Under the pieces are notes generated by a model. It saw nothing but the letters and a program-made list of their open reading frames with translations. It was not told the origin of the DNA and made no database searches. Position numbers and translations under genes: made by a program. This document shows positions 6,499 to 64,000 of a DNA stretch of 64,000 nt, one piece after another (position 1 is the stretch's first letter; every line of letters begins with the position of its first letter). Source of the stretch: Octopus sinensis (Eukaryota); NCBI RefSeq assembly GCF_006345805.1, contig NC_043002.1:99944001-100008000 (forward strand). The letters are read 5' to 3'.

Positions 6499-6529
<31 letters not shown>

Positions 6530-6595
6530 CATACCTATATATATACATACATATATATACATACAATATATACATATATATATATACATATATAC

Positions 6596-6630
<35 letters not shown>

Positions 6631-6905: not shown

Positions 6906-8210
6906 TCGTTATTGTATTTCAAATATTTGCTGTAAGGTAATATGAAAGCCCAGCCAGATCAAAACAACTTACATTATTTGCATCGCTTTTTCCGTTTGTT
7001 CTCTCTTACACAGTTTCGAATCTACATACCCATACACATGTATTTCTCTCTCTCTCTCTCACTCTCTGTGCATGTGCGTGTTTGTGTGTGTATGTGTGTG
7101 TGTATGTGTAAGCAATGAAGCTGAACAACATCAAGAATACTATTCTGTCCATCGCATAATATTAGTTGCGTACGTGTCCAATCTTTCTAGAGATAAATTT
7201 CTAACCAAATCACAAACAATATCGAAATACTGATGCCAAGCCATTTAGCCAGTCTCCCAATTATCGATTCTTAAAGGTAATATCGATCCTTCAATATACG
7301 GAAACCAGTTACATAAATATCGGTATGTTCGTTCATACATTCCGATTTTGACAACCGCACCCATCCTACCTTCGTTAGCGATCTTCGTTAAAGAAGCGTA
7401 TCACTCCTGTCATTGTAGTTGCCTTTTGTTTGTTTGTTTCTGATTGAATTCTATAGTTTTATTTATAGGCTACTCTAATGAAACATAAATCCTTGCTTTT
7501 TTTTACTCTCTTCTAATAAGGAACTGTCAGTCCCATTGCTTGGAGACGTTTCTTTTTACCATACAGTTTGGATGGTTAGTTAACGCTAGTTGTTTTCCAT
7601 TTGCCATTTATATATTTCATTTAAGTATTTTTAGAGACCTGATATTAAGATATACTGTTCACATTTTGTCTTTGTATATCTACTATGGTTTCTATTTATG
7701 ATATTTTAGAAACTCTATATATGAAATAAAACACTTGTACTTTGTTTCTAATAAGTAATTTATTCTGTAGTTGTTTGTCTTCCACGTGAAGGTAAGTTTA
7801 AACGTTTGAAACGCATTGGGTATTTTTATCAGAATTGTACTTGGTTACACCACACACGCGCATACAGACACACATACATACATACATACACACATACACA
7901 GTTTCACGCACACACACATCATCTATGTTTTTTCGGCCCCACTGATACAGTGCTAGTGATAAATCTAAATCGACTGCCAAAAACCGTTTTCGGAACTGTG
8001 CAGCACTACATTCCAGCTCTTAAACCTACAAGAATGTTGAGCGTCTTTACGTATTCCTAATCTGATCTCTTGAGGATGATTCAGTGAAAAAAAGTTCGTT
8101 TTTTTTTTTCACTGGTAAATTCATTTTCTATTTGTTTCATATAAATTATATTACATAAACTCTGTTGAAATTCTAACATTTCAAAGATATTTATATTTGA
8201 AAATATCTAT

Positions 8211-8740
8211 TTTACTCTTTTGCACGTTTCAGTCATTTGACTGTGGCCATGCTGGAGCACCACATTTAGTCGAAGAAATCAACCCCAGGACTTATTCATT
8301 GTAAGCCTAGTACTTACTCTATCGTTCTCTTTTTGCCGAACCGCTAAGTTTCGGGGACGTAAAAACACCAACATCGAATATCAGGTGATGGGGGAGGGGA
8401 GGATAAACACAGACAGAAAGACACATACGTACAATAAATAAGTTAATTGCATTGCAATTAAAAACAATTATGTATTAAGAATTTGGGTACTTTACCAATA
8501 GTATATTGGATAAATACTATCCCTTAGTGGGTTGCACACATAGCCCCTAACTTACTTTGTATATATATATATATATATACACCACGGGCTTCTTTCAGTT
8601 TTCGGCTTCCAAATCCACTCTCAAGGCTTCGATCGGCCCGAGGCTATAGTAGAAGTCACTAGCCCAAGTTGCCCCGCAGTGGGACTGAACCCGGAATTAT
8701 GTGGTTGGAAAGCAAGCTTCTTACCATACAGCCACGCCTT
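8211..8740 (-). mobile_element. SINE family A (OK-like; tRNA-derived head, internal (TA)n)
   Basis: Reverse complement reads GGCGTGGCTGTATGGTAAGAAGCTTGCTTTCCAACCACAT...GGGTTCAGTCCCACTGCG, and the tail ...CAGTCAAATGACTGAAAC matches the copy at 49648-50080. Confidence 0.9.
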
Positions 8741-10544
8741 CGCCTATATGTCTCTAATGTTTTAAGTATTTGCTTAATGCGAGAAAACAAAATGAAGACA
8801 ACTTCGAATCAACAAGGGACACAATCAAATTCTGGTCTCATGGAAAGAACAAATTTTTCATCACCGTGACGCGTTAAAAACGGAATGTCACTTGGGATAG
8901 TGCTAATCCTGAGTACACCACGCATGTAACGAAAATTGAATGATCAGGACTGAAATGTTTGCTATCGCATAGCCGATATGAAACTGAATCACGACAGGGC
9001 TGCAAAATGATATATTAAAGAGATTTCTCCGTCTTTGTTACTACCACATAAACAACATCAGCAAAGATGCTGCAAATAAATCTAAATAGTATGATATATA
9101 TGAAATGCTTTAGCTACAATATCTTACCTCTAAGTTTACAATCATTTCTGATATAGGATGGCATGTGTGATAATTTCCAAAATTTTATTTAAAACAATAT
9201 GCAGTCGGAATTAAATCAGAACTTTGGTAAGGGAACAAAACGGAAAGAGTTTCTCCTGTATTAGAACTCATCAATTAATATTAGTTTCCTAAAAATCAAA
9301 CGTATATAACCGCAAATTTACATAATTTTAATAGTTGTATAATAATCAATTCTTAAATTTACACATTAATATATAATATATAGATTACGGGAAAGGAATT
9401 ATGAAAAGAAATTTCTGAAAACGAAGATTCGTACATGATGTTCAATATATAGAATAGTTTAATAAATCACAGAATTTTCAGAAATACGTATCTGTTCGAG
9501 ACGATTGTGAAGCGCAAGACGCAGTTTTAAGTAGATCTACAGAGTATTGCAGATATATAAATGATATTATAGATATTTATAATTCAATTTTGTGATAATT
9601 ATGTCGATGTCAAATATTAGATAGAAGTAAACTGGAAAATCAAATTATAAATCACTTCGTTATGTTAGCATCTGAACAAACTTCGTTTGAGAAAGGATTA
9701 AATGAACTTTGAAAATCTGGCTATAATTAATGCTTTTCATTTTCGTTCAAAGACGCAATTAAATGCAACCATAAGAATGGCAAATAAAGTCAACCCTTGA
9801 AATGTTATTAATCTGTAAATCTGTCATTACGCACAAGTTATTATTTAGCCCTGAGATAACAATGACCAATCAAAACATTAATCAAAGGCATTCCGAATTT
9901 GTTTATCCAGTTTGTATTCGAACGATATTTCTAAGACAGTTTTCCCGACATGAAGAATAATAAAAAAAAAATGGGATGTAAGATTTGACTCACCAACAAA
10001 TATAGTCTATTGTTGTGATGTAGTAAATGAACTAATTAATTTGCCAGCTTATATAAAATGCGATAAATCAAGAATGTCTTAGAAAGTTACACAGCCGTAT
10101 GAAAGACACTCAATTCGTTCGAATATCACTATGATAGATAATGAATCTATCAAGAAAAACTTCATGAAGATGCTTTTTAATTCCCGGAAAGGTCTTTTTT
10201 ATGAACAGCTCAAAAATCATTTGCAACAGTCAGCTCATGGAGTATGGGTGTTTCTCCCCGAGTTCTCTAGGTATTGATTTCGTCATTATAAACTCCTATC
10301 ATTTCTCATATCACAGAAACTTCGAGTGGTCTCCCACCTCTCGATAACAGTGGAACCACTCGCTCGGGTATTCAATGGTTTATACCGGTCCTACAGCATT
10401 CGCCTCCTTCTTGCAGTTTTGGCTTAATGTAATCACGGACAGCAGCTTATAGTATATAGCGTACACTATTTCTGTTGATAATTCAAATTTCTGTTACTGG
10501 TAGAGCTTTGTACGCACAGCAGTTCTTCATTGGCATCGACCCCC

Positions 10545-10925
10545 AGTACTCAATTGGTACTTATTACATCGAGCCCTGAAAGGATGAAAGGCAAAGTTGA
10601 GCTCAGCGGAATTTGAACTCAGAACGTCTTTATAACGGACGAAATGCCGTTAAGCATTTTGCCCGGCGTGCAAACAATTTTGCCAGGTTACCGCCTTACA
10701 CCCGATTAATAATCCTTTCTACTACACGGGGTCTGAAAATGTGGGGGAGGGGTTGGCTAGTCGATTACATCGATCCCAGGCTTCAACAGGTACTATTCTA
10801 TCGACCACGAAAGGATAAAAGGCAAAGTCGACCTCGGCGGAATTTGAACTCAGAATGTAAAGACGGACGAAATGCCGCTAAGCCTTTTACCCAGCGTGCT
10901 AACGATTCCACCAGCTCGCCGCCTA
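10545..10925 (-). mobile_element. Two adjacent copies of SINE family C (CORE-like, OR-type)
   Basis: Motifs GAAAGGATGAAAGGCAAAGTCGACCTCGGCGGAATTTGAACTCAGAACGT and CCAGCTCGCCGCC, shared with 59950-60548 and 62824-63052. Confidence 0.85.
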
Positions 10926-11159
10926 ACACCATGTTCATGATGACAAATATATTTTACTAAAGTCTTCAGCAATTTAAACGTTAGAAATAAAGGCAATGCG
11001 TTTGAACAGAAATATGGTAACAAAGCGGTTACTGCTATACCGGACCGCTTAGGGCTGGGTTACATAAAGAAAGAACAAGCCCTAGATAAGGAGGAAAAAA
11101 ACTGATGAGAAAACAAAAATCAAGTGCCCTAATGGTAGAATTGTTATGGGAAAGAAGTA

Positions 11160-11517
11160 ATCTTTTACTTGTTTCAGTCATTTGACTGCGGCCATGCTGG
11201 AGCACCGCCTTTTGTCGAGCAAATCAACCCCAGGACTTATTCTTTGTAAGCCTAGTACTTATTCTATCTGTCTCTTTTGCCGAACCGTTAAGTTACGGGG
11301 ACGTAAACACACCAGCATCGGTTGTCAAGCGATGTTGGGGGGACAAACACACACATACATATATATATACATATATACGACGGGCTTCTTTCAGTTTCCG
11401 TCTACCAAATCTACCCACAAGGCTTTGGTCGGCCCGACGCTATAGTAGAAGACACTCTCCCAAAGTGCCACGCAGTGGGACTGAACCAGAACCATGTGGT
11501 TGGTAAGCAAGCTACTT
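11160..11517 (-). mobile_element. SINE family A, body and 3' part; its head is split by the 2 kb insertion, with the remainder at 13525-13555
   Basis: Matches family A up to ...CCATGTGGTTGGTAAGCAAGCTACTT. The expected continuation ACCACACAGCCAC resumes at 13542. Confidence 0.92.
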
Positions 11518-13524
11518 TATTTCAATAATTTGCCACTAGGGCATCACACAGAGGTAGCAGTAGCTCCGGGCTGGACACAGACATTAAAGGATGATGGTGG
11601 TGGTGGATGAAGATGGTGATGGGAGAAGTCAGAAAGCGCCCGTCGACTTTTGCTTCTCTAAAACAATGTTCATTTTTCAGTAATTTTACAGAGTTCAAAG
11701 ATTTCAAAAAATTCAAAAAATTTCGAAAAATTACAAAATGTTCACATTACATATTTTAGAGGAGGCAATGAACCTCCTCTTCCATATGTTACAAGTATGT
11801 TACATCGCCTAAGTGACCCGGCCGACCATTGCTCTTGCCTCATTGAGGCAATACTCGCTGGTCAGGCCGGAGTCCAGTGGTATGGTCTGGAAAGAGTCCA
11901 CCGGGTAGGAACTCACGATCCCGTGTAGATCAACCCTTCCCACGACCCCCGCAGCTAACTGCGAAGGCCACTCGGGGTTTTCCACACAAGACCGGATTAC
12001 CTCCCAATGTCCTCTCTTTCTCACTTTTCTGACGGCGTCTTCCACCTTTTTTCCCTCGAAAAAGAGGAGCACAAAATCTTCTACAAATAGTCCCTCAGGC
12101 GGCACACCCGCCTGAGAGGACCGGAGATACTCGGGAACCGCCGTCTGCGTGTAGCAATCCGCCGGCGGGGCTCCGTTTCTCTTTTCTTTTCTTTTCTTCT
12201 GGCCCTGGGCCACGGGAGGCTGAGGTCCGGAGCTGTGCGCACCGGGTTCTCCTCTCCCGGAGCTTTCGGGTCCTTTGGTGGGTCGCCATTGCTCCCCACC
12301 TTTCTCTTTCTTTTGGAGGAGGATTTGTCCCCCTCCTCACTTTGTTTCTCTCCCTCCACTGGTGGGGCAGGGAGAGGCTCTGATATCAGCCGCTCCAGGA
12401 TCCTACTCTGGTCCCTGGGGCAGCTCTTCTTGATGTGACCGGTCTTCGAACACCGGTGACACTTGGGGGCGCGTCCCTCAAGCATCACCGGATACTTGGA
12501 TCCGGCCATCTTCAAGAAGTCTGGCAAAACCCTTCCCAGTTAGCCGCAGGCTGCATTTTGACGTTGAGGATCTTTGCGTCCCTGTCACCCAGACCCCGGC
12601 GGATAGAGTCTTCTAGCCACTCGGGCTCAAAGCCGGGCGGCAGGCCACAGACCCATAAACGTAACAATTTCCCCCCTTGTAACTGGGGAGAAACAGAATC
12701 TCATCGCCCTCAATGGGCTGGCTTGCAAATTTGCAAGCTGCTTTAGCGGAGTCAAATAGCAACCATACCGTTGCGTATTTGACTCCCCGTTGAATATGTT
12801 TAACGGCTGGCATATAGTCTGCCAGCTCGTTCACAATGGTGTCTCTCGGAAAAACCATTATGGTGTCGAGTGACTTTGAATATGTCCTCAGCACCACGGT
12901 CTTTTCCTCGAGTTCGTGCAAATATTTTTTGGGAGGTGTTAATTCCCACACAGTGAAATTCTTTGCCTTTGCCATAACGTAAGAAAAATACAGTTCAAAA
13001 TGATAAACTAAAATTAGACACAGAAAGGAGGAAAAAAATGCAACAGAAGAGAAGAAATAAATTAAAAATGGCAGTTCAAAAAAGTTTTTACAAATAAATA
13101 ATAGACAGAGAAAGAGAGTTCAATTCAGACAAAGGAATTCAGTTCTTTTTTTTTTTTTTCACTTCTTCGGCCAAAAATTGTAATCCAGGCCAAATGCACT
13201 GTTGGTAAAACCCTTGGTAAATAATCCTTGGTAATCCGTGGACAACACAACGACAATTTCAACAATAATTTTTTCAGACGGACTATGTCGCTTCAAAAAT
13301 ACAATTTCTTTTCACTCGACACAGGCAGAAAAATTATATCTGGAGCAAAGTGGAGCCTTATTATTTGCTAAAAAATATTAAATGCTAAAAAACATTCATG
13401 CAAGCAATAAAACTTCACTAAACTCGGAAAAACATAAAACGCCTACCCGTAGTCGATTCAAAAGTTCAACAATTCACGTTGAAACAACGCGACATTTGCC
13501 GGAGCAAAAAACAACACGTCTGTC
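11518..13524 (-). mobile_element. 2007-bp ORF1(Gag)-only non-LTR-type element, copy 1
   Basis: Perfect 17-bp TSD TGGTAAGCAAGCTACTT at 11501-11517 and 13525-13541. ~550-bp T-rich 5' UTR, one frameshifted ORF, ~290-bp 3' UTR, AATAAA at the 3' junction, and no EN or RT. Confidence 0.9.
11809..12975 (-). pseudogene. Frameshifted Tx1/L1-type ORF1p/Gag-like protein: RRM-like regions, CCHC knuckle, KRKRK motif, C-terminal domain
   Basis: MAKAKNFTVWELTPPKK...YATVWLLFDSAKAACKFA...LFLPSYKG, then a shift to KLLRLWVCGLPPGFEPEWLEDSIRRGLG, a shift to PDFLKMAGSKYPVMLEGRAPKCHRCSKTGHIKKSCP (CX2CX4HX4C)...SSKRKRK, and a shift to EDFVLLFFEGKKV...CVENPEWPSQLAAGVV...VT*. The RRM call is inferred from the sequence pattern. 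Confidence 0.82.
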
Positions 13525-15114
13525 TGGTAAGCAAGCTACTTACCACACAGCCACCACGAGTAACTTCGGTGTATTTAGGAACGTTCCAGTGTGTTCTTGT
13601 TTTTCTAAGACACGGGGCTGTGATTTGGTGAAGATTTTGTTGCTAATCAGAGAGCATCGAGGTTCCATAGTTATTCTGTTGGGTCAGGAGAATTATATAA
13701 TGTGTTTGTGAGTAAGTTTTTCGCAACCAATCAAATGTTTTAGCCATTTTTTAATTTAATTTTTCTTTTTTTACAATTTTTGTTTTGTTCCTTAATTTTT
13801 TTGTGTGTAGCAGATGGAGAAGTTGTTCGGGCGTGGAATCTATAATCCAACACAAACAGCAATATTTTCGTCATCACCTTAGCCGGAATCTTTTGCTCCC
13901 ATAACCCCAATATTACGTAAGTAGGTAGGCCTATAAACTGGATATTTCTATTACGTCCCAACCTTCATTGTTCCCGTCCTTTCTCAATAATCTGAGTCTT
14001 CCCCCCCTCTCTCTCTTCTTTGGTTTGTTCTTATAACTGAAAACAGGCTAAGGTTTAAAAAAAGGTTATCCATTTTTCTTCACTTTTTGAGGGTGGATGA
14101 GAGTCTTATGTTCTTCGAAAATTGTGCCTTTAGTTATACTAAGGATTTTGCTACAATCGGAATTTAATCACAATCATTATTTGTACGGCACAGACCGATT
14201 TTAGCTCCCTATACGTTACACGGTTTATCCGGTGCGTATGGCCAGTTTTGATGGCAGCACAGTAAATTCTGAGAGAGTAAGAAAAAGAAAAAGAGACAGT
14301 GTGCGTGTATATGTGTATGTGTCTGTGTGAGAGAGAAATGGAAGAACAAAATATCGACTGCAATATTGGCTGATATGTAATTCATCGACTTCCAAGAAAT
14401 AAAGCCAATGTTTATCTCCGGTGGATCTGAGCAAAGGTTGCCAGAAGAAATACTGCGAGCGTTTGGTCCTATGTTCTAATTACTTTGATATTTTTTCTTG
14501 ACTTGTATTAGTCGTAAAACATGATTACCTTACCTTTATAGGGGTATCCTAAACAGATGGTAGTGTGATTTCTGATGTATACTTCCTAACTATTTCTAGT
14601 AGGAAGTGTGATAAAGTTTCCCGTTTTCAATTGAGTTTAAAAGTTTGTGATTTTTCATTAAAAACCATTAAATATTCTAGTAGATAAAAACAGTTTGGGA
14701 TTGTCTCTAGAAAACAATTTGCTATTTATATTGAATAGAAATGTTTTCAACACTTTATTCATGAAACATCAATCATCAAGGTCGGTATTGAAATACACGT
14801 AATGTTGACCTTGTATTTTGATAAACAGTTCTCAACATTTTTGAGAAAGATGTCTGTCACTAAGTTAAATTTCATGATTTATATCAGTAGAGAGAAAAAA
14901 GTAATTAATAGTTCACAAAATAGTAATTTTGTTGCTATTGTGGTGAGATGGTAAAACCGTTAGAGAGTCGTAAAAAGTGCTTTATGATAATTGTTCCGAA
15001 TCTTCAAGTTCTGAATTCAAATCCGTGTAAAGCCAATTTGGCCTTTCATCCAGTAAGAGATAAATTATAGTACTAGTCAGTTACTATAATTATTATCATC
15101 ATCATCATCATCAA

Positions 15115-33823: not shown

Positions 33824-34215
33824 AAGGCGGCGAGCTGGCAGAAACTTTAGCACGCCGGGCGAAATGCGTTGCCGTATTTCGTCTGCCGTTACGTTGTGAG
33901 TTCAAATTCCGCCGAGGTCGACTTTGCCTTTCATCCTTTCGGGGTCGATAAATTAAGTACTAGTTACGTACTGGGGTCGATGTAATCGACTTAATGCCTA
34001 TGTCTGTCCTTGTTTGTCCCCTCTATGTTTAGCCCCTTGTGGGTAGTAAAGAAATAGGTATTTCATCTGTCTTTACTTCTGAGTTCAAATTCTGTCGAGG
34101 TCGACTTTACCTTTCATCCTTTCGAGGTCAATAAGTTAAGTACCTGTTCCGTGCTGAGGTCGGTCTAATCACCGCCCCTAAAATTTTGGGCCTTGTGCCT
34201 AGAGTAGAAAAGACT
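33824..34215 (+). mobile_element. SINE family C with two tandem body units
   Basis: One head, then two GAGTTCAAATTC..GAGGTCGACTTT..CATCCTTTCG units. Confidence 0.88.
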
Positions 34216-48147: not shown

Positions 48148-49647
48148 CAGCCTTTCAGCATTGTTAGAAATCTTAATGTACAGAAAATTAGGGCGGATGA
48201 ATCACAGAAATGAAAGAGTGTTAAAAAGAATCGGTTTGTAATATCAGGTTTTGTTCTTGTAGTCTCTAAAACCAATTCTTAAGGAGTTGACATTACGTTT
48301 CAGCATACAAGGCTTGAGAAAATAAGTACTGTTATTGAGCAGTTATACTTTAATTAAATGCCACATATTTCACCCCGGAAATGTGTCGCATTGGTTAAAA
48401 TATTTTTAATAAACGGTGCGTTATAAAAGAAATGAAGGGTCAGTGTGTTGTAAAAGTGATGCAATGACCTCGGTTTTTTCCCGGGCTCAATGAGGAGGTG
48501 GTGAAGTGCTGGAGTCTGTTTAATGAAATCACACGACTCATTCTCTCTCTATCTGCATGTGTGTGTGTCTCTCTCTCTCCCCCTTTCTCTCTCTTTCATA
48601 TATATATATGTGTGTGTTCCATGTATATATAATTCCTACATAATGTATGTTTCAGCCTAAAAACAAATTCTCTCAAAGCGATAATCCACACCAACAAAAT
48701 GCTAAGTATATACTGAGAGAAGCCTGTTGTATACATACATACATATGTGTGCGTCTGTCTTTGTGTCCGTCTTTCTCTTCCACCATGACTTGACAACTGT
48801 TGGTTTGTTTACGTCCCTGTAACTTCCTTGTTCGGCAAAAGAAACCAATAGAATAAGTACTAGAAACAATAAATCTTGCGCTCTATTTCTTTGACTAAAA
48901 GCCTTTAATGTATAAAAGAATAGATGAATATAAAGTAGATATATTTATTAAAGTAATTACAATTATAAAACTAGTCCAGCTTTCGTGATTTAAAAATTTG
49001 TCCAAGTTTATTAGAATAAATGTGTTCTGGAAATATGTTGGTATATGCATGTAACAGTTTGAGGAGTGGTTGAGGAACTGTGGTGATCATACTTGTAGGA
49101 TTGAGTGTGAATTTGCAAGTAACAAAATTTCGATATATATATATATATATAGTAATATAAAGCTATGTGATGTGGTGCTAAATGTATAGCAGTATTAGGG
49201 AAGCAAAAAATGCGGTTAGCCTCGAACAAGACAAAGAAAGAGGACAGTGTTGTTTGCGATGAAGCAGAACAACATCTACACGTAATTCATTAATTGAGAG
49301 CCGCTTTCAAGAATTGGTGAGAAGAAATCTACGCGTGCCACTAGATTCCTACACTATATCAGGAACTATAATGCATTTGTTACCTAACCTCCAATCATCA
49401 GAGCACCGAACTAGTGTAACTATTTCAATGTAGATGATGACACTATTTTTTAGACACGGAAAAAATATGGTGTATCACTTTCCAAGATGAATTACACTTC
49501 CAACCACTTCCTTCTGTGGTGGCGCAATGTCCAATACATGAAATTGATAACAACGACCTTATCGGCCTCTACATGTTACCTTCTCTCAAACTTGTTTTTG
49601 TTGGTGTGAAATAAATTGAATGGATACCGATGGAGCGATTCCGCATA

Positions 49648-49818
49648 GGCGCAGGAGTGGCTGTGTGGTAAGTAGCTTGCTAACCAACCACATGGTTGCG
49701 GGTTCAGTCCCACTGCGTGGCATCTTGGGCAAGTGTCTTCTGCTATAGCCCCGGGCCGACCAATGCCTTGTGAGTGGATTTGGTAGACGGAAACTGAAAG
49801 AAGCCTGTCGTATATATG

Positions 49819-49884
<66 letters not shown>

Positions 49885-50080
49885 TGTCTGTCCCCTAGCA
49901 TTGCTTGACAACCGATGCTGGTGTGTTTACGTCACTTAGCGGTTCGGCAAAAGAGACCGATAGAATAAGTACTGGGCTTACAAAGAATAAGTCCTGGGGT
50001 CGACTTGCTCGACTAAAGGTGGTGCTCCAGCATGGCCGCAGTCAAATGACTGAAACAAGTAAAAGAGAGTAAAGAGAGTA
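49648..50080 (+). mobile_element. Full-length, uninterrupted SINE family A (empty target site reference)
   Basis: GGCGCAGGAGTGGCTGTGTGGTAAGTAGCTTGCTAACCAACCACATGGTTGCGGGTTCAGTCCCACTG...(TA)n(TG)n...CAGTCAAATGACTGAAACAAGTAAAAGAG. Confidence 0.95.
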
Positions 50081-52842: not shown

Positions 52843-53420
52843 TGATCGAAAACAATGTGTTAGGTCCACGATCGCTGAACTAACTAGAAGTAGGCGACAA
52901 CCCCCGCTCAAACGTGATCCGGACGTCAATCTTTACGGCGATGTGATCCTCTAAACGAAATTCGAGAGCAGAATGATGCTTGTTGGAATATTTTTTATAT
53001 ATAATTTCGTTAGACCAGACTGAGCTGAGGCACGATTTTATGGTAAGATATGTGATCCCTTAAATTCTCATTGACGCGATTATTTTTTTTTATTTCATTA
53101 TTTGCCTGATGAATGTGTAAATTATACTTCTTTTCTCGGTCTATTTTAAGTTCATTGATTGCAATCATAGCAGGAAAAAGCATACAAAATCCATTCATCT
53201 ATATTCTTTTGTCACTACATGCAAAATTAATTATAGGTTTTAAGTTTCTATATTCATAATACGTCCATTATTTTTTTTTATATGAGGAGGCATTTTCTGT
53301 AGTATCTCTAGTCTGAGTGGATTTTGTAGGTAGCAAATGTGCGCAAGCCTCGCACGCGCGCATGTGTTTGTATAATGTATATGTGATATATAATGTATAT
53401 GTGATATACGTGATGTATAT

Positions 53421-53452
53421 GCGCATGGCTCTGTGGTAAGAAGCTTGCTTCC
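53421..53452 (+). mobile_element. Isolated 5' part of a SINE family A head, directly fused to Gag-only element copy 2
   Basis: GCGCATGGCTCTGTGGTAAGAAGCTTGCTTCC. Confidence 0.8.
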
Positions 53453-55290
53453 TCACATGCACGTTGAGTTGACTTGACTTCTTGACATTGAACAGTGAGG
53501 ACGTGAGCTTTGAGCTCCGTCCTAAAAAGAAGAAAAGTAAGACCAAAGGAAGTCCGTCGAAGTAAGTGATTTTGTTTGTTTTGAACTGGGCATAATTTAT
53601 TGTGTGAATTATTTTTTCAGTAATTGTGCCCAGCTCTGGGACAATTTCGCCTGCTCTCGGCGGCTATTGTGTTATTTTTGCTTGTTTAGCAAAAGAAAAA
53701 GCGTTGGGGGCGTATCCGCCCGAAGACATAAAATTTTGTTCCAGTTGCTGTTGCTGTCAGCTGTGGCCCGTATTCGTGGTTTTTTACCATTTAAAAGTTC
53801 CTGTCACGAAGTTCCAGTTGGACTGGTGTACTTGTTGGTCAGGATTGTCGTTTTTGCTGTGTAGAATTGTTTTCTTCTATATTTTTTGCTCCAACTTTTC
53901 TTTTGTTTTTGGACTTTCTTAGACTGTTTTTGTTTTTCTTTGAACATTTGTGAACTTTTAACACATGGCAAAAAAGAATGAAGCCACTGTCTTGGAGTGG
54001 GTGATTTTCCCGCCCAAGGAGTGGTTAAAAGACTTTAATAATAGAACGGTGGTGCTTTGTACCTATTCTAGGTCACTCGGCGCCCATCGTTCAATTTGAT
54101 AAAGAAACTATAAAAAAAGAGTGGGCAGAATATCTGCCATCTGTAAAATTCATCGGTCGGGGGACCAAATTTGCAACGGTCTGGTTGCTGCTTGGTACCT
54201 CCGAGGAAGCTGGTACATTTGCCAGCAAGGCCCCTGAGGGGAACAAGATTTTGTTCCTCCCCACTTACTGTGGGAGGAAGATAAGGAGAGCCTGGGTGTG
54301 CGGGTTGCCCATGGACACGGAGGTGAGATGGATCGAAGATACCATCCGGCAAGACCTGAGGGATAGCGGACTCAAGCTATTGAGTATGAATATATCTCCT
54401 GTGGTCGACTGGGAGGGGTCAAAGGCAACATTGACCCGGTGGCCGTGAGAAATATGATATTCCCAGACTTCCTAAAAGTGGCCAGGTACAAGTACCCGCT
54501 GATACTTAAGGGACGCCCCTCTTCCAATGTCATCTGTGCCTGGAGCCTAGCCATATCAGGAAGAACTGTCCCAAGGGCCGTGGTAAAGCCCTGGAGCACA
54601 AAAAAAAGAAAAAGTGCCTGCCGCCCTCTCTTTGGAGAGGGAGACGGTGGAAGTCGTGGAGGAAGATGCCTCCAAGAAAAGAAAAAGAAAGATGAGCAAC
54701 AATGGTTGCTCCCCAAAAATGTACAGGCTGCGGAGGATGGTAGCGACCGCCTTCGTCTGCCGACGCAGCCCCCTGCGCCCGCATCCACAAAAAAAAAGAG
54801 GAAAAAGAGGAGCAGGGGACGGTCGGCTGATGTTCCTGGGCCGCCGACAGAACCGCAAGTGGGATGTGTGCCACCAGCGGATGAGGCACCATCAGTGGGA
54901 AGTGTGCCTCTGAGAGAGCTGTTAGAGATCTCTTCCCGTGAGGAGGAGGAGGTGTTTGTCCTCCTTTAGCACGTGGGAGGGACTGTGAGTGAATTTTTGG
55001 ACGGTCTGGCCGACCGAGGCCGTGCGTACTCGGGCTGCACAAGTAGTCCAATATGGCCTCCGCATGTGGCTGCGGAGGTAATAACATAAATTGTCAAAGC
55101 GACCTTTGACAAGAAAGATTTGTCTTCCTCTTCGCAGGCCCCGACCTGTCGATGCAGCATTGGGAGAGACACAGTAAAACTAAAACTCAGCTCTGCCACT
55201 CTGCATCTAGTGGGGCTTCGTGAATGTGACTGCAGAAATGGAACTTACAGTTGTGAGCCCAACACCGCTAGGCTACGCTCTTGACACAAC
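53453..55290 (+). mobile_element. ORF1(Gag)-only element, copy 2 (3' end uncertain)
   Basis: ~510-bp T-rich 5' UTR, then an ORF homologous to copy 1 along its whole length. No EN or RT. No right-hand TSD found. Confidence 0.8.
53965..55284 (+). pseudogene. Frameshifted Gag/ORF1-like protein homologous to 11809-12975
   Basis: MAKKNEATVLEWVIFPPKEWLKDFNNRTVVLCTYSRSL / IVQFDKETIKKEWAEYLPSVKFIGRGTKFATVWLLLGTSEEAGTFAS..ILFLPTYCGRKIRRAWVCGLP / PDFLKVARYKYPLILKGRP / CHLCLEPSHIRKNCP (CCHC) / SKKRKRKMSNNG / FVLL*HVGGTV..RG..CTSSPIWPPHVAAEV. Confidence 0.85.
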
Positions 55291-55361
55291 TATTTTCTAG
55301 TAATAACAAATAGATTAATGATGTATATAACAGATGAATTATAGTTATGTATCTAGCAGTA

Positions 55362-55760
55362 AGGAGGTGAGCTGACAAAACCGTTAGCACGTCAGACAAG
55401 ATGTTTAACGGCATTTCATTTGCCATCACGTACTAAGTTCAAATTTTTCCAGGGCTGACATTGCCTTTCATCTTTTCAGAGTCGATAGAATATGTATCAA
55501 TTGAACATTGGCGTCGATGTAATCCTCTAAAATTACTCGTCTTGTACCAAAATTTGAGACCAATATATCTAGCAGTTTCAACTTCCAGTCACATAAATTA
55601 GCAGCAATTTGGCAGAATCATTAGTGAATCAAATGGAATAACCATTCGGTATTTGTTCACCCTCATTGAATCCAAAGCTCAAATCCTGCCGAGGTAAACT
55701 TACAGCATTCGTAGTCGAGTAATTAAATACCAGTTCGGAGCAGTCGCTACACAGAATGGG
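55362..55760 (+). mobile_element. Two decayed SINE family C copies
   Basis: AAGGAGGTGAGCTGACAAAACCGTTAGCAC..AAGTTCAAATT..TTGCCTTTCATC and GGCAGAATCATTAG..CTCAAATCCTGCCGAGGT. Confidence 0.65.
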
Positions 55761-56764
55761 TAAAATGTTGAAGGAGGTCTTTTCTTGTATCCCTTTCAGT
55801 ACAAATTGCTCCGTGGCTACGGTTAATACACCAACCATAAGCCTACATCTAATTATGAAAGCTAGTATGAAGTGAAGGATTATGCCTACCTGCCACTAAT
55901 CTCAAACCCTGGTAATAGCATAGGTGTTGTAATTTCAAAATGCATTTAAGTATGCACATGTGTAATAAATCTTCCTTATTTCAAATGGGACGTTGTAGCA
56001 GTTCGTATATATTCATACATTTGCTTTTATTTCTAATCCATCTCCGTTGTGGAATAGCATGATATTATTAATATTCAGTAGATAGCAGTCATCGAATATA
56101 TTTCACTTATCAATGTAGTATTTGCATTCTGTACAGGCAAATACTAAGAGTGAATGTGTGTGTTCTGATGAATTCTTTGTATGCATGCATACATTCATTG
56201 TTCGCAACATATTGTAATTCTTTTCCGTTGGTTTCAAACTGTGAAATAATTCATACAGGAATAGTAGCTGACCCCATTATTTCAGATTTGTGCCTGTCAC
56301 CTAACGAAATTATACCGCTGTTTCCATTCACCCTTCAGATAATGGTACTCTCTGTTTAGAATAACTCAAGAAATACATATTAAACAATATTTTTCACAGC
56401 CGAATGTATAAACCGTATACTTGTTTATATGTTAAGGTAGCTTTATTAATAAGGTTATATTTAAAAAGAAAAGAAACGTCCTTTTAAAGTACTCTTAATC
56501 AAAAATTCTGAATTACTATTAAAAATATGTATCTATAACTGATAACCGATAGTATATTCGATGTGATAGTTCGGCATTATTTTTGTTACTTCTATCTTTA
56601 ATAACTACTATATAATTTCGTTTGAACCGAAACGTAACAGAAACTCTTTATTTGGGAAATTGTTGCATTGGACGACATTTGCTTGCTTTTTGTTTTAATA
56701 TACATTGTGATTGTAACCAACTTCGGTCATGAATGACCATGGAATTGCACCTAGAAATTTACCC

Positions 56765-57202
56765 TCCGAGGTACAAGTCTAGGCAAGGTTGTTTATGGAA
56801 GACCAGCAGTCGCCCACGCATACCAGCCTCCCCTGTCCACGCCACCGATGTTATGCAAGTGAAAGGCAAAGGCGGATACAGCTTGGCACCATTGACGTCG
56901 CAGCTCATTTTATTAACGTGCAAGTGGCTGAGCACTCCACAGACACGTAGTTCTCGCGGAGATTCAGCGCGACACAGAGTCTGGCCCTTTAAAATACAGG
57001 TACAACAGAAACAGGAAGAAAGAGTGAGAGAATAGTGTGGTGAAAGAGTACAATAGGGTTCACCACCATCCCCTGTGGGAGCCTCGTGGAGCTTTAGGTG
57101 TTTTCCCTCAATAAACACTCGCAATGCCCGGTGTGGGAATCGAAATCGCGATCCTACGACCGCGAGTCCGCTGCCCTAACCACTGGGCCATTGCGCCTCC
57201 AC
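56765..57202 (-). mobile_element. SINE family B with a fourth tail type
   Basis: Head and body as at 51038, but diverging after CACTTGCACGTTAAT into ..GGTGCCAAGCTGTATC..CTTCCATAAACAACCTTGCC. Confidence 0.88.
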
Positions 57203-57895
57203 TTTAATATACATATGAATTAGTAAACAATAACGTCTTGGTCACAGATTTCCAATGCTTAGTCTCTGGTTCGCAACATTTTGCTGTGATTGACTTAAAA
57301 TGTGTTCAGTAGATAGCTACAGATACCAACAACATAAAGGACATTCAAGTCTTGACGAACAAAAAATATTGGTGAATTACACGCACGTGTGCACACACAC
57401 ACACACACATACATAATTTCAAGGTTTTCACGTCTTTTTTTTGTGTGCTGGTGTCTTTGGAGGATTGCTTTGCAGCGGTTTTTTTTTTATTTAACGAGAG
57501 TTAAATAGTTGGAAAATGTTTTATTCAGACCTAAGTGGTTCTGAGTTGTCCTCTTCGGAGGAGAAACCGGTAATGGCTGAGGATAGAATGAACAAATGCT
57601 TGGAAACGAAAAGTTTTGCAGAAGTGACAGAAGTTAAATGGAAAGAGGTAGAGTTGTCGAACATGAAAAGATATCAAAAGATATCAAAAGATGGCTCGTA
57701 GAGTTGGTGGTGACATGAAGCTCTCACCACCACAAAAGGTAATGGATGACATGGTTAAGAGGGCCATTGGGTACAAAGTCTACTCGGTAGAAGAAAGAAA
57801 AAGATTGAACACTTGGAAGCCGAAATAATTGAGAAGGCGTTGTGGGCGTTGTGGAGGAATATAGCGTTTTGTGCAAGATGAAACATGTACGGTAC

Positions 57896-58252
57896 TTAGT
57901 TAGTTAGTTAGTTAATTTGGCTCAAAAGCAAATAGCAAGGCCATGTAGGGGGACATGGAGTTAAGTACAGGGTGGTGTTCATGTAAAGAGTTCAGGCCAC
58001 TTGAGGTCCAGGGAGGCTTTGAACAAAGCGGTCGTCGGCATCTTCACCATCTCGTCTGGCAGCTTGTTCCACGGATCCGCAACCCGGACGGAGAAAGCTC
58101 CGCTCCTTCGATTGAGATGAAATCGTCGCAGGTAGAGCTTTTCGGAATGACCCCGCAGCCGACGCTCTGGAGCAGGAGTGAAGAACAGCTCTTTCGAGAG
58201 GTTACACTTTCCGCTTGTGATGTTGTGGGCGAGAATGAGATCACCACGGCGG
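57896..58252 (-). mobile_element. CR1-clade LINE 3' stub with (CTAA)n tail
   Basis: RRRGDLILAHNI..FF..RLRGHSEKLY..FSVRVADPWNKLPDEMV..FKASLD is the typical CR1 ORF2 C-terminus. The tail appears as TTAGTTAGTTAGTTAG on the plus strand. Confidence 0.88.
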
Positions 58253-58919
58253 CGGTGGTACAATTCAGAACGGAGGAAGCAGCGAAGAGAATTGCCGTAA
58301 ACGCGGTGAAGTCAAACAAAGTGATCCTTCTACTTACTTATAACTGTAGAAGTACTTCCAAGATTAAGGTAGAAGGAATCCCTCCGCATATAGATGTGGA
58401 TTGGGTTGCGGCGGCTGTCCTCCTAGCAAGTAAGGAGGAAGTAGCCGTCCTTGAGGCCACAGAAAGAGAAGGGTCAACGTTGAAGGGTAAAACGTTAGAC
58501 CTCATTATACAGGCCGAGTTAGAAACCAACCCTGGAATGTTTGGCAGTGACATCATTTTCAGAGTGTGGGTAGAGGGCAGAACACCTCGTTGTTTTAAAT
58601 GTGTCCAAAAGGCCACATTAGAGCATACTGCCCCCTCTACAAAAGCAAAATCTAGAAAAAGCTGAAAAGGGGTTAGAGAAGAAGAAAGAGGTGATGCAGG
58701 AGGAAGAAAAGAAAAAGGATGAACTGTTGACAGTGGCTGAGGGAAGAAGGGACACTGTGAAGTAGGACCCCAAACCACACCCACACCCTGTCAGACCCAC
58801 GCTCTTCATACATACACCGAACCCACACATTTCTTCCCTACACAATCTAAAACAAGAAAAAACAAATACAACAAAACACACAAAATTCCCATCCCCATGA
58901 AACTAGTGACGTATGTTTA

Positions 58920-59267
58920 TTGAGGGATAAGGAGAACAAGGAACTGATTTGTAAGACAACAGAATGGAAAACAGGAAAATTTGTGAACGTTGAAGGATAT
59001 ACAAATATAGTAGGTGGCACCATGTGTGTGCCATTTTCGGAGAAACAAAATGGAAGAAGTAAAGAAATATTAAAAAAAATAAGATACACATATTGGAAAA
59101 TTTATGCAGACTTAAAAAGGACAACGGACAATATGGGTTATAAGGAACTGTTAAGAAAACATGGCCTGGACGTGTTAAAAGGACTCCCAGGAAAAAAGGA
59201 AGTGATGCTGTATGAGGTGGGGCAAGCAGCTCATTTTCATTATTCATTTTCATATCATTCATGTTAA
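58920..59267 (+). other. Open 115-codon frame, the probable C-terminal domain of the copy 3 ORF; function unknown
   Basis: Stop-free frame LRDKENKELICKTTEW...GLDVLKGLPGKKEVMLYEV inside element copy 3, after a T/P-rich linker. No true ATG. Confidence 0.45.
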
Positions 59268-59949
59268 CATACGTTTAATTTTTATTTTACAGTTTTATCT
59301 ATTTTCTCGTGTTATGTGTCCCCACATGTATTTGTATTGTCCCCTCTATATATTTGTCCTTTGTGGACAATAAAGAAACACACACAGATATTGACAATTG
59401 TTTTTATGTCTCGTTATATAAAAAAAAAAACAAGCCACAATCCTCTTTATATATGATTTGCAAAATCACATCTAGATATTTATTTTCACAAGCGATCGGG
59501 AGGTTTTGAAACTGAGACGCAACTACAAAGTCACTAATAACATTATCTGTTAAAATAATATATGTTTCTGAATTTGCATTTTTTTCTGCTTCTGTTTCAT
59601 TGAAACCTACACAGAGTTCTTGTACGAAAATTATTCTTGTTATATCAAGATAATATTTATGTTTTTATGCTCGTAGGCATCTTACGTCATTTGTGTTGTA
59701 TATCGAAATGTGTGTGTACAGTGAAGGGTTATACAGGCTTCTGAGTACGCGCGTGTGAGTAAATATGCTGTTGTGTATGTCAATGCTTATAGGGTGTTCT
59801 AAGTCTTTTTGATTTCGTTACATAATGGAAATCAAATAAAAAGTTTTTGGAGGCCTTCGCATGGCAAGTATAAAAGCCTTTATCAAAAATTCAGACAAAA
59901 TGTTTGAGAAAACTCAGGGACTCTGTTTTATTAACCGTATTTGAATATA

Positions 59950-60548
59950 TATTTCTTTATTGCCCACAAGGGGCTAAATACAGAGGGGACAAACAAGGAC
60001 AGGCAAACGGATTAAGTCGATTATATCGACCCCAGTGCGTAACTGGTACTTAATTTATCAACCCCGAAAGGATGAAAGGCAAAGTCGACCTCGGTGGAAT
60101 TTGAACTCAGAACATGAAGACAGACGAAATACCTATTTCTTTACTACCCACAAGGGGATAAACACAGAGGGGACAAACAAGGACAGACAAACGGATTAAG
60201 TCGATTATATCGACCCCAGTGCGTAACTGGTACATATTTAATCGAGCCCAAAAGGATAAAAGGCATAGTCGACCTCGGCGGAATTTGAACTCAGAACGTA
60301 GCGGCAGACGAAATACTTATTTCTTTACTACCCACAAGGGAATAAACACACAGGGCTAAACAAGGACAGGCAAACGGATTAAGTCGATTATATCGACCCC
60401 CAGTGCGTAACTGGTACTTAATTTATCAACCCCGAAAGGATGAAAGGCAAAGTCGACCTCGGCGGAATTTGAACTCAGAACGTAACGGTAGACGAAATAC
60501 GGCTAAGCATTTCACCCGGCGTGCGAACGTTTCTGCCAGCTCACCGCC
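59950..60548 (-). mobile_element. Multimeric SINE family C: one head plus three ~180-bp tandem units
   Basis: Perfect 23-bp TSD TTTATTAACCGTATTTGAATATA at 59927-59949 and 60549-60571. Confidence 0.93.
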
Positions 60549-61353
60549 TTTATTAACCGTATTTGAATATAACGAAATCACGAATAACAGTTTTAAAAAA
60601 TATATTCTCGAAGCATTAGCATAGGTTTTCTGAAATCTTAAATTATACTCTTAAAATACCACGGTACACCTAGATCTCACTTTTCATGCGCGGCTTTTCG
60701 ACCGCTGATATTGTTTAGCCCCATGTCAATCAAAATCCAAAATCCAGCCGAGTTATTACCAAGTCATTCAAATTCCTGTCCGTTTTCGTACGCTTTTTCT
60801 TGGCTACTACTACTTTTAGTAATCAGAGCGACCTCGAGAGCAAATCTTATGCAATTTCCAGCGCGTGTTTGTGTGTGTGCGTGTACACAAGAGTGTGCGT
60901 GTGTGGTTATGTTAGCTCCGATTTAACAGATTTATTGCCAAAAACAAGACCAACATATTTCCTCTTCGAGTTGTAGGCTGCCATTATCCAAAGTAACCTT
61001 CCTGTTTAAGACAGTGATGTCTAAATTGAGATATGCTGGTACTTTTTTTCTAGCGGGTTGGAAATATAGAATGTCCGATATCAGATCACAGTATCATATG
61101 ATCATATATCCATGTTCCTCATTGTGTAAGCCGTTGTTTGCTTTTCCTTTGGGTTCTATTCTATTCTCATTCACACACATGTATATATGTAGGATAAGAG
61201 AAGTTAGAGAAGGAACGTATCTAGACAATCAATACAAATTCCAAAGCATAATTTAAAGCACACAGCGAAATAAATATACAAATAAATATAAATAAAATAA
61301 TTTAAAGCACATTTAATTATATAAGAAAATTTAACTTTATACATGTATGCATA

Positions 61354-62823: not shown

Positions 62824-63052
62824 TATTTCTTTATTACCCACAAGGGGCTAAACACAGAGGGGACAAACAAGGACAGACATAGGTATTAAGTTGATTACAT
62901 CGACCCCAGTGCGTAACTGGTACTTAATTTATCGACCCCGAAAGGATGAAAGGCAAAGTCGACCTCGGCGGAATTTGAACTCACAACGTAACGCAGACGA
63001 AATACCGCTAAGCATTTCGTTTGGCGTGCTAACGTTTCTGCCAGCTCGCCGC
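62824..63052 (-). mobile_element. Monomeric SINE family C
   Basis: 13-bp TSD CTGTTATAATACC at 62811-62823 and 63053-63065. Confidence 0.92.
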
Positions 63053-64000
63053 CTGTTATAATACCGATATCTCGCTGGCTCAGTAGTTGGTTGTTTTAAG
63101 GATTCCTTCGCTCGACTACATCTTAAATGATAAGCAAATGCGTGGTACAATCTGCTAGATCTTACTAGCTTATAAGCATATGAGCTGCGTGCGTTTGTGT
63201 ATAAATATATGTACGAAAATCACGATTATTCATATGATGATAACCACTGTTTTCACCTAATTACATTGTCCTAAATGTTGGATAATTGAGGATTTTCCTT
63301 GGGTAGGTTCGATAATTTTAACTTTATTCATAAGGCACTAATATTCACATAAATTCTCAGTTATCAACAAAATTGAGTTATTTGAACACTCGTTGGCGTA
63401 GCACATATCTGCACACGCAAACAGACGTATAAATACGTGTATATAACATCATACACATGCGCAGTGTGGCACGCTCGCGAAAATTTCGAGCTGTAAAACC
63501 AAGCGCACACATAAATAGATACAACACGCTTGCAACATATACACCTACACACAGTCTACTGGAGCTTACATGTACAACGTCACAATATATACGTACATAC
63601 ACGCCCACTTGTATATCTTTCCCACATGCTCAAATATTCCTTGACTTATATTGAAACGTAACCTCCTACACGAGTTAGGTAATAGAAAAATAATGGCGTG
63701 TAGGCGTTTATACGTTTTTACACAAACCCATTCGTAAAACCTGACATATAATATATTCTCTAAAGGAAAGATCCTGGTGTCTTCTTGGAAACTATTCATT
63801 GTAAATAAATGACATTACACACCTTTCTAATAACGTTACTATAAATCAAGTGCTTTAGAGCTACGAGCAAGTAACAGATAAGTGATATATATATATGTCT
63901 TAACTATTGAAATAAACATTTCCTCAAATACTCTATTATTGCTAATATTTGTTACAGTAATTGGATAGCAGCCATCCTGATACACTTACCTTATCATATA

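What the first reader, a model, noticed from the sequence alone, without database searches (positions are those of the whole stretch)
53421..55290. Second, diverged Gag-only copy starts at the same nucleotide of the same SINE head: candidate SINE-targeting system
Seen: copy 1 reads (minus strand) GTGGCTGTGTGGTAAGTAGCTTGCTTACCA|element, and copy 2 reads TGGCTCTGTGGTAAGAAGCTTGCTTCC|element. Both are family A SINE heads, with junctions within a few nt and the same orientation. The empty site is visible at 49660-49695. The two proteins are clearly homologous but far apart in sequence, so these look like independent insertions rather than a duplication. Established: several Tx1-clade families are sequence-specific for multicopy small RNA genes or microsatellites (for example Dewa, Keno, Mutsu). 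Inference: a lineage of non-autonomous elements uses a high-copy SINE head as a safe-harbour target, giving layered parasitism. Caveat: n=2, and copy 2 lacks the downstream SINE half and the right TSD.
Basis: partly seen in the sequence, partly recalled or inferred. Interest (0 to 1): 0.88.

Follow-up and report, generated by a model that had tools for sequence, protein, structure and literature searches.

The report
Octopus Gag-only retroelement wearing a SINE head
A small family of octopus retroelements that kept only the Gag-like gene of a LINE is always joined to the first ~40 bases of a common SINE: one copy really did insert into a SINE, but copy 2 and its closest relatives seem to carry that SINE piece with them as their own 5' leader.

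Summary
Both window copies, plus two more that I found in Octopus sinensis, abut the head of the same tRNA-derived SINE. All four are in the same orientation and end within 1-4 nt of the same SINE position. Chance cannot explain this (about 2e-4 per event).

The element is an about 2-kb derivative of an APE/RT LINE group that keeps only ORF1 (two RRM-like domains plus a CCHC knuckle), comparable to mammalian HAL1.

Copy 1 is a true nested insertion. It has a 15-17-nt target duplication inside the SINE, and the rest of the SINE follows it.

Copy 2 is different, and so are both O. sinensis copies:
- None has the SINE 3' half.
- All three share an identical junction lacking one base (GCTTGCTT-CC), seen in 0 of 9 empty SINEs.
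- The best tree groups them, with moderate support.
- Copy 2 is bracketed by a 10-nt direct repeat lying outside head plus element.

So in that lineage the head most likely travels with the element, captured from an ancestral insertion like copy 1.

That leaves two independent hits on one SINE site, not four. SINE targeting stays plausible but unproven. Tx1 membership is untested. The sample is four copies.

The parts
11516..13524 (-). Copy 1. An ORF1-only LINE derivative of about 2009 nt: 5' UTR 13524-12976, frameshifted ORF1 12975-11809, 3' UTR 11808-11516 ending ...TTGAAATAAA.
   Evidence: Bounded on both sides by the duplicated SINE segment. The protein has a CCHC knuckle and is 53% identical to O. 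sinensis LOC115225585.
13525..13554 (-). SINE-A head (consensus positions 13-42) upstream of copy 1. Its last 15 nt (13539-13525, GTAGCTTGCTTACCA) are the 5' copy of the target duplication.
   Evidence: 100% identity to the SINE consensus over 30 nt.
11162..11515 (-). Rest of the same SINE-A (consensus position 26/27 to the tail) downstream of copy 1. 11515-11501 is the 3' copy of the target duplication.
53421..53452 (+). SINE-A head fragment fused to copy 2 (GCGCATGGCTCTGTGGTAAGAAGCTTGCTTCC). It has a 4-nt gap relative to the consensus, and the junction variant lacks one base.
53453..55318 (+). Copy 2 body. 5' UTR 53453-53965, ATG at 53966, heavily frameshifted ORF1 with protein homology traceable to about 55080. 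The 3' end is uncertain; 55318 is proposed from the flanking direct repeat, and it cannot lie beyond 55358, where a family-B SINE starts.
53411..53420 (+). TGATGTATAT, the upstream copy of the candidate 10-nt target duplication that encloses head plus copy 2.
   Evidence: This 10-mer occurs only twice on this strand of the window, at these two places.
55319..55328 (+). TGATGTATAT, the downstream copy of the candidate target duplication.
49645..50075 (+). Intact SINE-A copy. This is a paralogous empty site, not an orthologous one.
8276..8747 (-). Second uninterrupted SINE-A copy, of the subfamily with GGCGTGG / AAGAAG / GCTTGCTTTCC. It carries an unrelated internal insertion.

Best explanation
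**What it is.** The element is a non-autonomous, ORF1-only derivative (5' UTR, Gag-like ORF1, 3' UTR, about 2 kb) of an octopus LINE group. Complete members of that group encode an APE endonuclease, a reverse transcriptase and a zf-RVT domain. The element must be mobilised in trans by an ORF2-bearing partner. That last step is inferred.

**Association with the SINE.** The family is tied to one spot in the tRNA-derived SINE-A: the 3' foot of a hairpin, GGTAAGTAG-CUU-GCUUACC, at consensus positions about 22-42.

**Copy 1.** It shows the primary event. Target-primed insertion nicked the SINE at position 26/27 and joined the 5' end at position 41/42, giving a 15-17-nt duplication with the SINE intact on both sides. 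This is shown.

**Copy 2 lineage.** In the lineage leading to copy 2 and the two O. sinensis copies, an ancestral insertion of this kind was transcribed from the SINE's first base. The first about 38 nt of the SINE thereby became a heritable 5' leader (a 5' transduction that became fixed). Head plus element has since been copied as one unit to sites that are not SINEs. This is inferred from four things: the shared junction, the missing 3' halves, copy 2's outer direct repeat, and the best tree.

**Consequence.** There are two independent events at the same SINE position, not four. Two events still imply a real preference of the family, or of its partner's endonuclease, for that site.

**Open question.** The leader is kept far better than the adjacent 5' UTR, so it probably does something, such as setting the transcript start or acting as a promoter element. 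What it does is not known.
For: **Kind of element.**
- The ORF1 relatives are cephalopod proteins.
- In L005 and L003 the homologous ORF1 is followed by an ORF2 with Exo_endo_phos, RVT_1 and zf-RVT.
- The AF2 model (pLDDT 77) matches tandem-RRM proteins, and a CCHC knuckle is present.
- Copy 1 is 2.0 kb between its duplications and has no RT.
- 48 nt of its 3' UTR are 83% identical to the 3' UTR of the full LINE in L005.

**Copy 1 is nested in a SINE.**

**All four family members abut the head.**

**Four other Gag-like families do not abut the head.**

**Head-only state.** No SINE remainder is found downstream of copy 2 (8.7 kb available), L002 (29 kb) or L001.

**Shared junction.** GCTTGCTT-CC is present in 3 of 3 head-only copies and in 0 of 9 empty SINEs. 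Fisher's exact test gives 1/220.

**Copy 2's outer repeat.** TGATGTATAT directly abuts the head and recurs at 55319. This 10-mer occurs about 1e-5 per position in the data.

**Tree.** In the best ML tree copy 1 is sister to (L002,(copy 2,L001)), with support 92/81.

**Homologous 5' ends.** All four elements start at homologous 5' UTR positions, and the SINE similarity stops at the junction.
Against: - The sample is only four copies, and two of them were found through gene models.
- The leader is too well kept for a passively inherited sequence. There are 0-4 mismatches in 25 nt between copies, although the ORFs differ by roughly a quarter to a third of bases. Independent capture from the SINE pool would explain this more simply.
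- No flanking duplication was found for L001 or L002.
- Copy 2's repeat is an AT-rich 10-mer in a low-complexity flank. I estimate p of about 0.01-0.05, and 0.18 for the generic TATAT-rich class.
- Alternative rootings of the family are not rejected (p-AU 0.10-0.17). The translations used for the tree were frameshift-corrected by hand.
- The true 3' ends of copy 2 and L002 could not be defined by homology, so later deletion of a SINE 3' half cannot be excluded.
- The SINE head alone has no B box, and the element is full of T-runs. Pol III from the SINE promoter therefore cannot make the full RNA, and the promoter is unknown.
Confidence: 0.5

Rival explanations
1. Pure SINE targeting. All four copies are independent site-specific insertions into SINE-A heads. 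Copy 2, L001 and L002 later lost their 3' ends together with the SINE remainder, through deletion or nested insertions.
For: - Copy 1 has both junctions in a SINE.
- The heads look like ordinary SINE copies, with 0-4 mismatches in 25 nt to the consensus, while the adjoining 5' UTR is barely alignable.
- The heads begin at the SINE's own 5' end.
- L001 is demonstrably cut at about 10975 by another repeat, with an LTR pair next to it.
- Target-specific Tx1-group LINEs that hit other transposons, together with their non-autonomous riders, are documented (PMC4494074).
Against: - Three of three would have to lose the 3' half.
- The identical one-base-short junction occurs in all three and in none of 9 empty SINEs.
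- Copy 2's direct repeat lies outside the head and directly after the element, with no SINE tail detectable before it.
- L002 keeps an ORF that reads to the family's C-terminus, yet no SINE sequence follows within 29 kb.
Confidence: 0.17
2. Template-switch chimeras. The partner's reverse transcriptase, on reaching the 5' end of the element RNA, jumps onto a SINE RNA (or a 5' fragment of it cut near the anticodon-loop equivalent). It copies that to its 5' end, which adds the head without any DNA-level targeting. Copy 1 would need a double switch on a SINE RNA template.
For: - The head always runs to the SINE's first bases and always stops at the foot of the strongest hairpin of the SINE head.
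- 5' addition of small-RNA sequence by template switching is known for L1/U6 and is described as common for SINEU (PMC4494074).
- Copy 2's outer repeat fits a chimera inserted at a random site.
Against: - Known jumps go to the 3' end of the acceptor RNA and copy it whole. Here only the first about 40 nt are present, with the same end point each time.
- Copy 1's 15-17-nt duplication with the whole SINE around it is explained much more simply as a target duplication.
- The shared junction and the best tree point to one event in the copy 2 lineage rather than repeated chimeras.
Confidence: 0.12
3. There is no biological link. The two window copies lie next to SINE heads by chance, given SINE density, or they arose by segmental duplication of one locus.
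For: SINE-A is common, at about one head per 15 kb in the DNA examined.
Against: - Four of four copies abut the head at one position and in one orientation, at about 1.6e-4 per event.
- The flanks of the four loci are unrelated and the elements are about 30% diverged.
- Four other Gag-like families lack the head.
Confidence: 0.01

Closest known systems
HAL1 (half-L1) of mammals
   Same: A non-autonomous LINE derivative that encodes only ORF1p and depends on a full LINE for ORF2p. HAL1s arose several times in mammals (PMC5753468).
   Different: The ORF1 here is the two-RRM plus CCHC type, not the L1 coiled-coil/RRM/CTD type. The host is a cephalopod. The element is joined to a SINE head, which is not described for HAL1.
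Target-specific Tx1-group LINEs and their riders (Tx1L into Tx1D; Tx1-Mar and SINEU-3 into Mariner-N4_AMi; Keno, Mutsu, Dewa)
   Same: A LINE lineage, plus a non-autonomous element using it, that inserts into one position of another multicopy element or small-RNA gene (PMC4494074, PMC3706591). Copy 1 has exactly that look.
   Different: - The target here would be a SINE head.
- Only one copy has both junctions in the target.
- No ORF2 is available to place the family in Tx1.
- Most copies carry the target's 5' part without the 3' part.
5' transduction and 5' UTR replacement in L1 and SVA
   Same: Upstream flanking sequence is transcribed with the element, carried to new loci, and can become the lineage's standard 5' end. 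L1 5' UTRs were repeatedly replaced by unrelated sequence (PMC5753468). 5'-transducing SVA groups are cited in PMC4494074.
   Different: - The captured piece is the first about 38 nt of a Pol III SINE.
- It is better conserved than the rest of the 5' UTR.
- A sister lineage is found inserted at the very position where the captured piece ends.
R2-type co-transcripts carrying upstream target sequence
   Same: Site-specific elements can be transcribed together with the upstream part of their target. R2 needs a ribozyme to remove it (Eickbush and Eickbush 2010, cited in PMC4494074).
   Different: No ribozyme or co-transcription was tested here. The SINE's Pol III promoter cannot read through the T-runs of the element.

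Membership tests
ORF1-only non-autonomous LINE derivative (HAL1-like) | The protein is homologous to the ORF1 of LINEs that also encode APE and RT. | tested here: met
   P0001-type ORF1 has 47 representative relatives, and every one of the ten looked up that carries an organism name is cephalopod. In L005 and L003 such an ORF1 is followed by an ORF2 with Exo_endo_phos, RVT_1 and zf-RVT.
ORF1-only non-autonomous LINE derivative (HAL1-like) | There is no ORF2 or reverse transcriptase inside the element's boundaries. | tested here: met
   Copy 1 is 2009 nt between its target duplications and contains only the ORF1 frames. No RT-like ORF lies in or next to copy 2.
ORF1-only non-autonomous LINE derivative (HAL1-like) | The 3' end is shared with an autonomous partner. 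| tested here: inconclusive
   A T-rich 48-nt stretch of copy 1's 3' UTR is 83% identical to the 3' UTR of the L005 LINE. The terminal 30 nt have no significant match in copy 2, L001 or L002, and no partner of the same family was found.
Type I LINE ORF1p (RRM domain(s) followed by a CCHC knuckle) | RRM fold(s) plus a C-terminal CCHC zinc knuckle. | tested here: met
   The AF2 model has two beta-alpha-beta-beta-alpha-beta units. The best PDB matches are tandem-RRM proteins (SFPQ/NONO, hnRNP A1 UP1), with E down to 9e-6 but low TM because of domain orientation. For the CCHC knuckle, the sequence profile matches known zinc-knuckle proteins in the PDB at E=6e-6; the Pfam zf-CCHC match of copy 1's own protein is below that family's curated cut-off (16.9 bits against 20.8), though relatives P0003 and P0006 pass it. 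The naming of the ORF1p type is from my own knowledge.
[quoted passage not shown] | The reverse transcriptase groups with Tx1 in a phylogeny. | not testable with these tools
   The family has no ORF2. The ORF2 of distant relatives (L005) has APE, RT and zf-RVT, and its named hits are uninformative.
[quoted passage not shown] | Most copies sit in the same target sequence, with both junctions in it. | tested here: not met
   The 5' junction is in the SINE head in 4 of 4 copies. The 3' junction is in the SINE in only 1 of 4.
[quoted passage not shown] | The endonuclease cleaves the target sequence specifically. | not testable with these tools
   This needs the partner's ORF2 and an in vitro assay.
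5'-transducing retroelement lineage | Related copies at unrelated loci carry the same foreign 5' segment with the same junction. | tested here: met
   Copy 2, L001 and L002 share ...GCTTGCTT-CC followed by homologous 5' UTR starts. Their flanks are unrelated.
5'-transducing retroelement lineage | Target duplications enclose the foreign segment plus the element. | tested here: inconclusive
   Seen in copy 2 only: TGATGTATAT at 53411-53420 and 55319-55328, with estimated p of 0.01-0.05. None was found for L001 or L002.
5'-transducing retroelement lineage | A source-type locus exists in which the element lies downstream of the full foreign sequence. | tested here: met
   Copy 1 has this arrangement, although it belongs to a different sub-lineage.

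The most novel reading that the evidence does not exclude
The family, or the endonuclease of its unknown ORF2 partner, truly homes to the hairpin of a high-copy SINE, and it has recruited the SINE's first about 38 nt as a conserved functional leader. That leader might act as a transcript start or promoter element, or as a homology guide that helps join the 5' end at the next SINE. This would be three layers of parasitism: a Gag-only rider on a LINE that lands in a SINE, which itself rides a LINE.
Probability: 0.3. Interest if true: 0.75.

Novelty: new variant of a known kind. Interest (0 to 1): 0.5.

Why it matters
Target-specific LINEs are valued as models of safe-harbour integration. Known targets are rRNA, snRNA and tRNA loci, microsatellites and a few DNA or LTR transposons. 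A SINE head as target would add the most abundant class of repeat to that list.

The case would also show an intermediate in how retroelements acquire new 5' ends. A nested copy (copy 1) and a lineage that has fixed the captured piece (copy 2) occur in the same family. The unusually strong conservation of the 38-nt leader suggests a function that could be tested directly.

If the association turns out to be only an old 5' transduction, it is a modest annotation point for cephalopod repeat libraries. In that case head plus element should be treated as one consensus.

Tried and rejected
**Looking for more copies (all failed):**
- Word-indexed protein searches with copy 1's read-through ORF1 and with P0001 returned only P0001.
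- The exhaustive representative search gave only P0001 and the chimeric gene model P0015 as close relatives.
- An exact look-up of a copy 1 ORF found nothing.
- A metagenome scan for the junction pattern gave four unrelated chance hits.

**Defining the 3' ends of copy 2 and L002 by homology (failed):** multiple alignment, local alignment to copy 1's 3' UTR, to the SINE, and to copy 1's last 30 nt were all at shuffle level.

**Does the SINE continue, diverged, past the junction into the elements?** No, the similarity is at shuffle level.

**Do other Gag-like or LINE families in the same genomes have the head?** None does. I checked window 57430-59400, L003, L004 and L005.

**Other SINE copies cut at the same place by a possible ORF2 partner:** the three candidates are just old, diverged SINEs.

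**Parent tRNA:** ARAGORN finds no tRNA in the window. Rfam finds nothing in L003-L005.

**Rooting of the family:** the best tree fits the leader-capture model, but alternatives are not rejected.

**Rejected idea for copy 1:** that its 3' SINE half is a separate 5'-truncated SINE which happened to land on the element's A-rich end. This would need a second coincidence producing a perfect 15-nt overlap.
Full report
**What is at the coordinates**

The window is octopus-like DNA. The only close protein match to the element's ORF is Octopus sinensis LOC115225585 (P0001). All named relatives are from O. sinensis, O. vulgaris, O. bimaculoides or Argonauta.

At 53421-53452 (+) there is a 32-nt piece, GCGCATGGCTCTGTGGTAAGAAGCTTGCTTCC.

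Directly after the head comes a 5' UTR, an ATG at 53966 and a frameshifted Gag-like ORF.

Copy 1 lies on the minus strand. Its SINE head is at 13554->13525 and the element at 13524->11516. Next comes GTAGCTTGCTTACCA again, followed by the rest of the SINE to about 11162. The 15 nt (17 nt with two preceding A) occur on both sides, which is a classic target duplication.

Uninterrupted SINE copies lie at 49645 (+) and 8747 (-). One amendment is needed: the two junctions differ, being ...TTACCA| in copy 1 and ...TT-CC| in copy 2.

**More than chance**

The head motif occurs 4 times in the window against 0.09 expected.

I recovered two further members of the family from O. sinensis:
- L001 (CM016886): head ATAGGCTGAGGCATGGCTGTGTGGTAAGTAGCTTGCTTCC|TGTGCATGCG, with the ORF at 10001-10846.
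- L002 (CM016865): head TAGGCGCAGGCGTTGCCGTGTGGTAAGAAGTTTGCTTCC|ACTGCGCATG, with the ORF from 16438.

All four known copies therefore abut the head in the same orientation.

A random insertion would reproduce the arrangement with a probability of about 1.6e-4.

Four other Gag-like or LINE families in the same data have no such head.

**What the element is**

Pfam sees only a weak zinc-knuckle match in copy 1's protein, below the family's curated cut-off; a profile of the family matches known CCHC knuckles in the PDB at E=6e-6, and two relatives pass the Pfam threshold. An exhaustive search with P0001 finds 47 representative relatives at 22-36% identity. These share an RG.KYGTVEVRF...LLP.Y.GRR...IPPE...W..AA ... 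VEGR.P.C..CG..GH...C pattern.

In O. vulgaris locus L005 such an ORF1 is followed by a 1132-aa ORF2 with Exo_endo_phos, RVT_1 and zf-RVT. In L003 it is followed by a decayed ORF2. The protein is therefore the ORF1 of an APE-type LINE group.

An AlphaFold model (pLDDT 77) shows two RRM-like units, and the best PDB matches are tandem-RRM proteins.

Copy 1 is 2009 nt between its duplications and has no ORF2. It is thus an ORF1-only derivative, comparable to mammalian HAL1 (PMC5753468). A 48-nt stretch of its 3' UTR resembles the 3' UTR of the full L005 LINE.

The four elements are 50-70% identical in protein. Their 5' UTR starts are weakly but detectably homologous. All are therefore full length at the 5' end, and the head joins at the same element position.

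**Target or baggage?**

Copy 1 is a nested insertion, and I see no simpler reading of it. The other three copies differ in four ways.

1. **No SINE 3' half.** None has SINE sequence downstream: 8.7 kb are available after copy 2 and 29 kb after L002, while L001 is cut at about 10975 by another repeat.
2. **Shared junction.** All three have GCTTGCTT-CC at the junction. Nine uninterrupted SINE copies have TTACC (5 copies), TAACC (2), TTTCC (1) or TTCTC (1). That is 3 of 3 against 0 of 9, and Fisher's exact test gives 1/220.
3. **Outer repeat around copy 2.** The 10-mer TGATGTATAT lies immediately before the head and again at 55319-55328, just before a family-B SINE begins at 55359. It occurs only at these two places on that strand of the window, and about 1e-5 per position overall. 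Allowing for the AT-rich context, I put the chance of this at 0.01-0.05.
4. **Tree.** The best ML tree makes copy 1 sister to (L002,(copy 2,L001)), with support 92/81. Other rootings are not rejected (p-AU 0.10-0.17).

Together these say that in the copy 2 lineage the head, the junction and the element were copied as one unit to unrelated loci.

**What speaks the other way**

The head is remarkably well kept. There are 0-4 mismatches in 25 nt between any two copies, although the ORFs differ by roughly a quarter to a third of bases. The first 150 nt of 5' UTR are only just alignable.

Either the leader is under selection, or the heads were taken independently from the SINE pool.

No outer duplication was found for L001 or L002. 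The 3' ends of copy 2 and L002 could not be fixed by homology. Similarity to the SINE does stop at the junction.

**Most likely mechanism**

1. Shown: an ORF1-only LINE derivative inserted by target-primed reverse transcription into the SINE-A head. The first nick was at consensus position 26/27 and the 5' join at 41/42. This is across the 3' two-thirds of the head's strongest hairpin.
2. Inferred: an ancestor of the copy 2 lineage sat in the same place, was transcribed from the SINE's first base, and fixed the first about 38 nt as its leader. Its descendants then landed outside SINEs.
3. Inferred: two separate events at one SINE position imply a site preference, which would belong to the endonuclease of an unidentified ORF2 partner.
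4. Inferred: the SINE's Pol III promoter cannot be responsible for full-length RNA. The B box lies beyond the junction and the element has T-runs within about 20-130 nt.

**Comparison with known systems**

Keno targets U2, Mutsu targets 5S and Dewa targets the tRNA-Leu spacer (PMC3706591). Tx1L inserts into Tx1D, and Tx1-Mar inserts into Mariner-N4_AMi together with its rider SINEU-3 (PMC4494074).

The present case works like a rider on such a system in copy 1. In copy 2 it works like a 5'-transducing lineage or a 5' UTR replacement (PMC5753468).

Membership in Tx1 cannot be tested without an ORF2. The criterion that most copies have both junctions in the target is not met.

**Verdict**

The finding is real and non-random. 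It is a new variant of known kinds. A genome-wide census and orthologous empty sites would settle it.

Noticed in passing
window 57430-59400 (+): A third Gag-like element from a different family, with an ORF at 57955-58665 and a CFKC knuckle. It is 42% identical to P0017 over the best-matching stretch. Its 3' end (...GTATTGTCCCCTCT...TTTGTGGACAATAAAG) resembles the 3' end of the full LINE in L005. It has no SINE-A head upstream, and its N-terminal part appears disrupted.
   Followed up: partly
L005 4441-~19200 (O. vulgaris OX597840): Three head-to-tail copies of a full-length LINE (ORF1 = P0004, ORF2 with APE, RT and zf-RVT), with a 5278-5286-nt period and 98-100% identity. The 3' end ...AAATAAAACACTGATAA is joined directly to the next 5' end GGACGTTACTTTGAC. 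An assembly gap (a run of N) lies at the right edge. Tandem LINE arrays suggest self-targeting or recent unequal exchange.
   Followed up: partly
L001 11503-11917 and 13662-14067: A pair of about 415-nt direct repeats, 94% identical, starting TGTAGTGATGC. They look like the LTRs of a small LTR retroelement inserted just downstream of the truncated Gag element.
   Followed up: no
L002 10001-36638: The O. sinensis gene model for 'uncharacterized protein K02A2.6-like' (P0015) splices the first 45 codons of the Gag-only element (about 16402-16590) onto an integrase (rve) exon 19 kb away. It is probably an annotation chimera of two transposon fragments.
   Followed up: partly
window 55359-55525 and more than 10 other places (e.g. 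10534-10927, 33824-33987, 60386-60550, 62893-63054): A second SINE family (GGCGAGCTGG...GTTCAAATTCCGCCGAGGTCGACTTTGCC), far more frequent in the window than family A. One copy lies directly after copy 2's candidate target duplication.
   Followed up: no
window 56700-57200: Another repeat with a tRNA-like end on the minus strand (...GGCCCAGTGGTTAGGGCAGCGGACTCGCGGTCGTAGGATCGCGATTTCGATTCCCACACCGGGC). It is 90% identical to L002 6247-6436. ARAGORN does not call it a tRNA.
   Followed up: no
window 5588-6940: About 1.3 kb of TA/TG-rich low-complexity sequence, which produces long spurious ORFs on both strands.
   Followed up: no
window 13560-13575 and 11148-11162: A possible target duplication of the host SINE itself around copy 1: AAGTTACTC upstream and AAGATTACTTC after the SINE tail. 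If real, the SINE was an ordinary 5'-truncated insertion before copy 1 landed in it.
   Followed up: no
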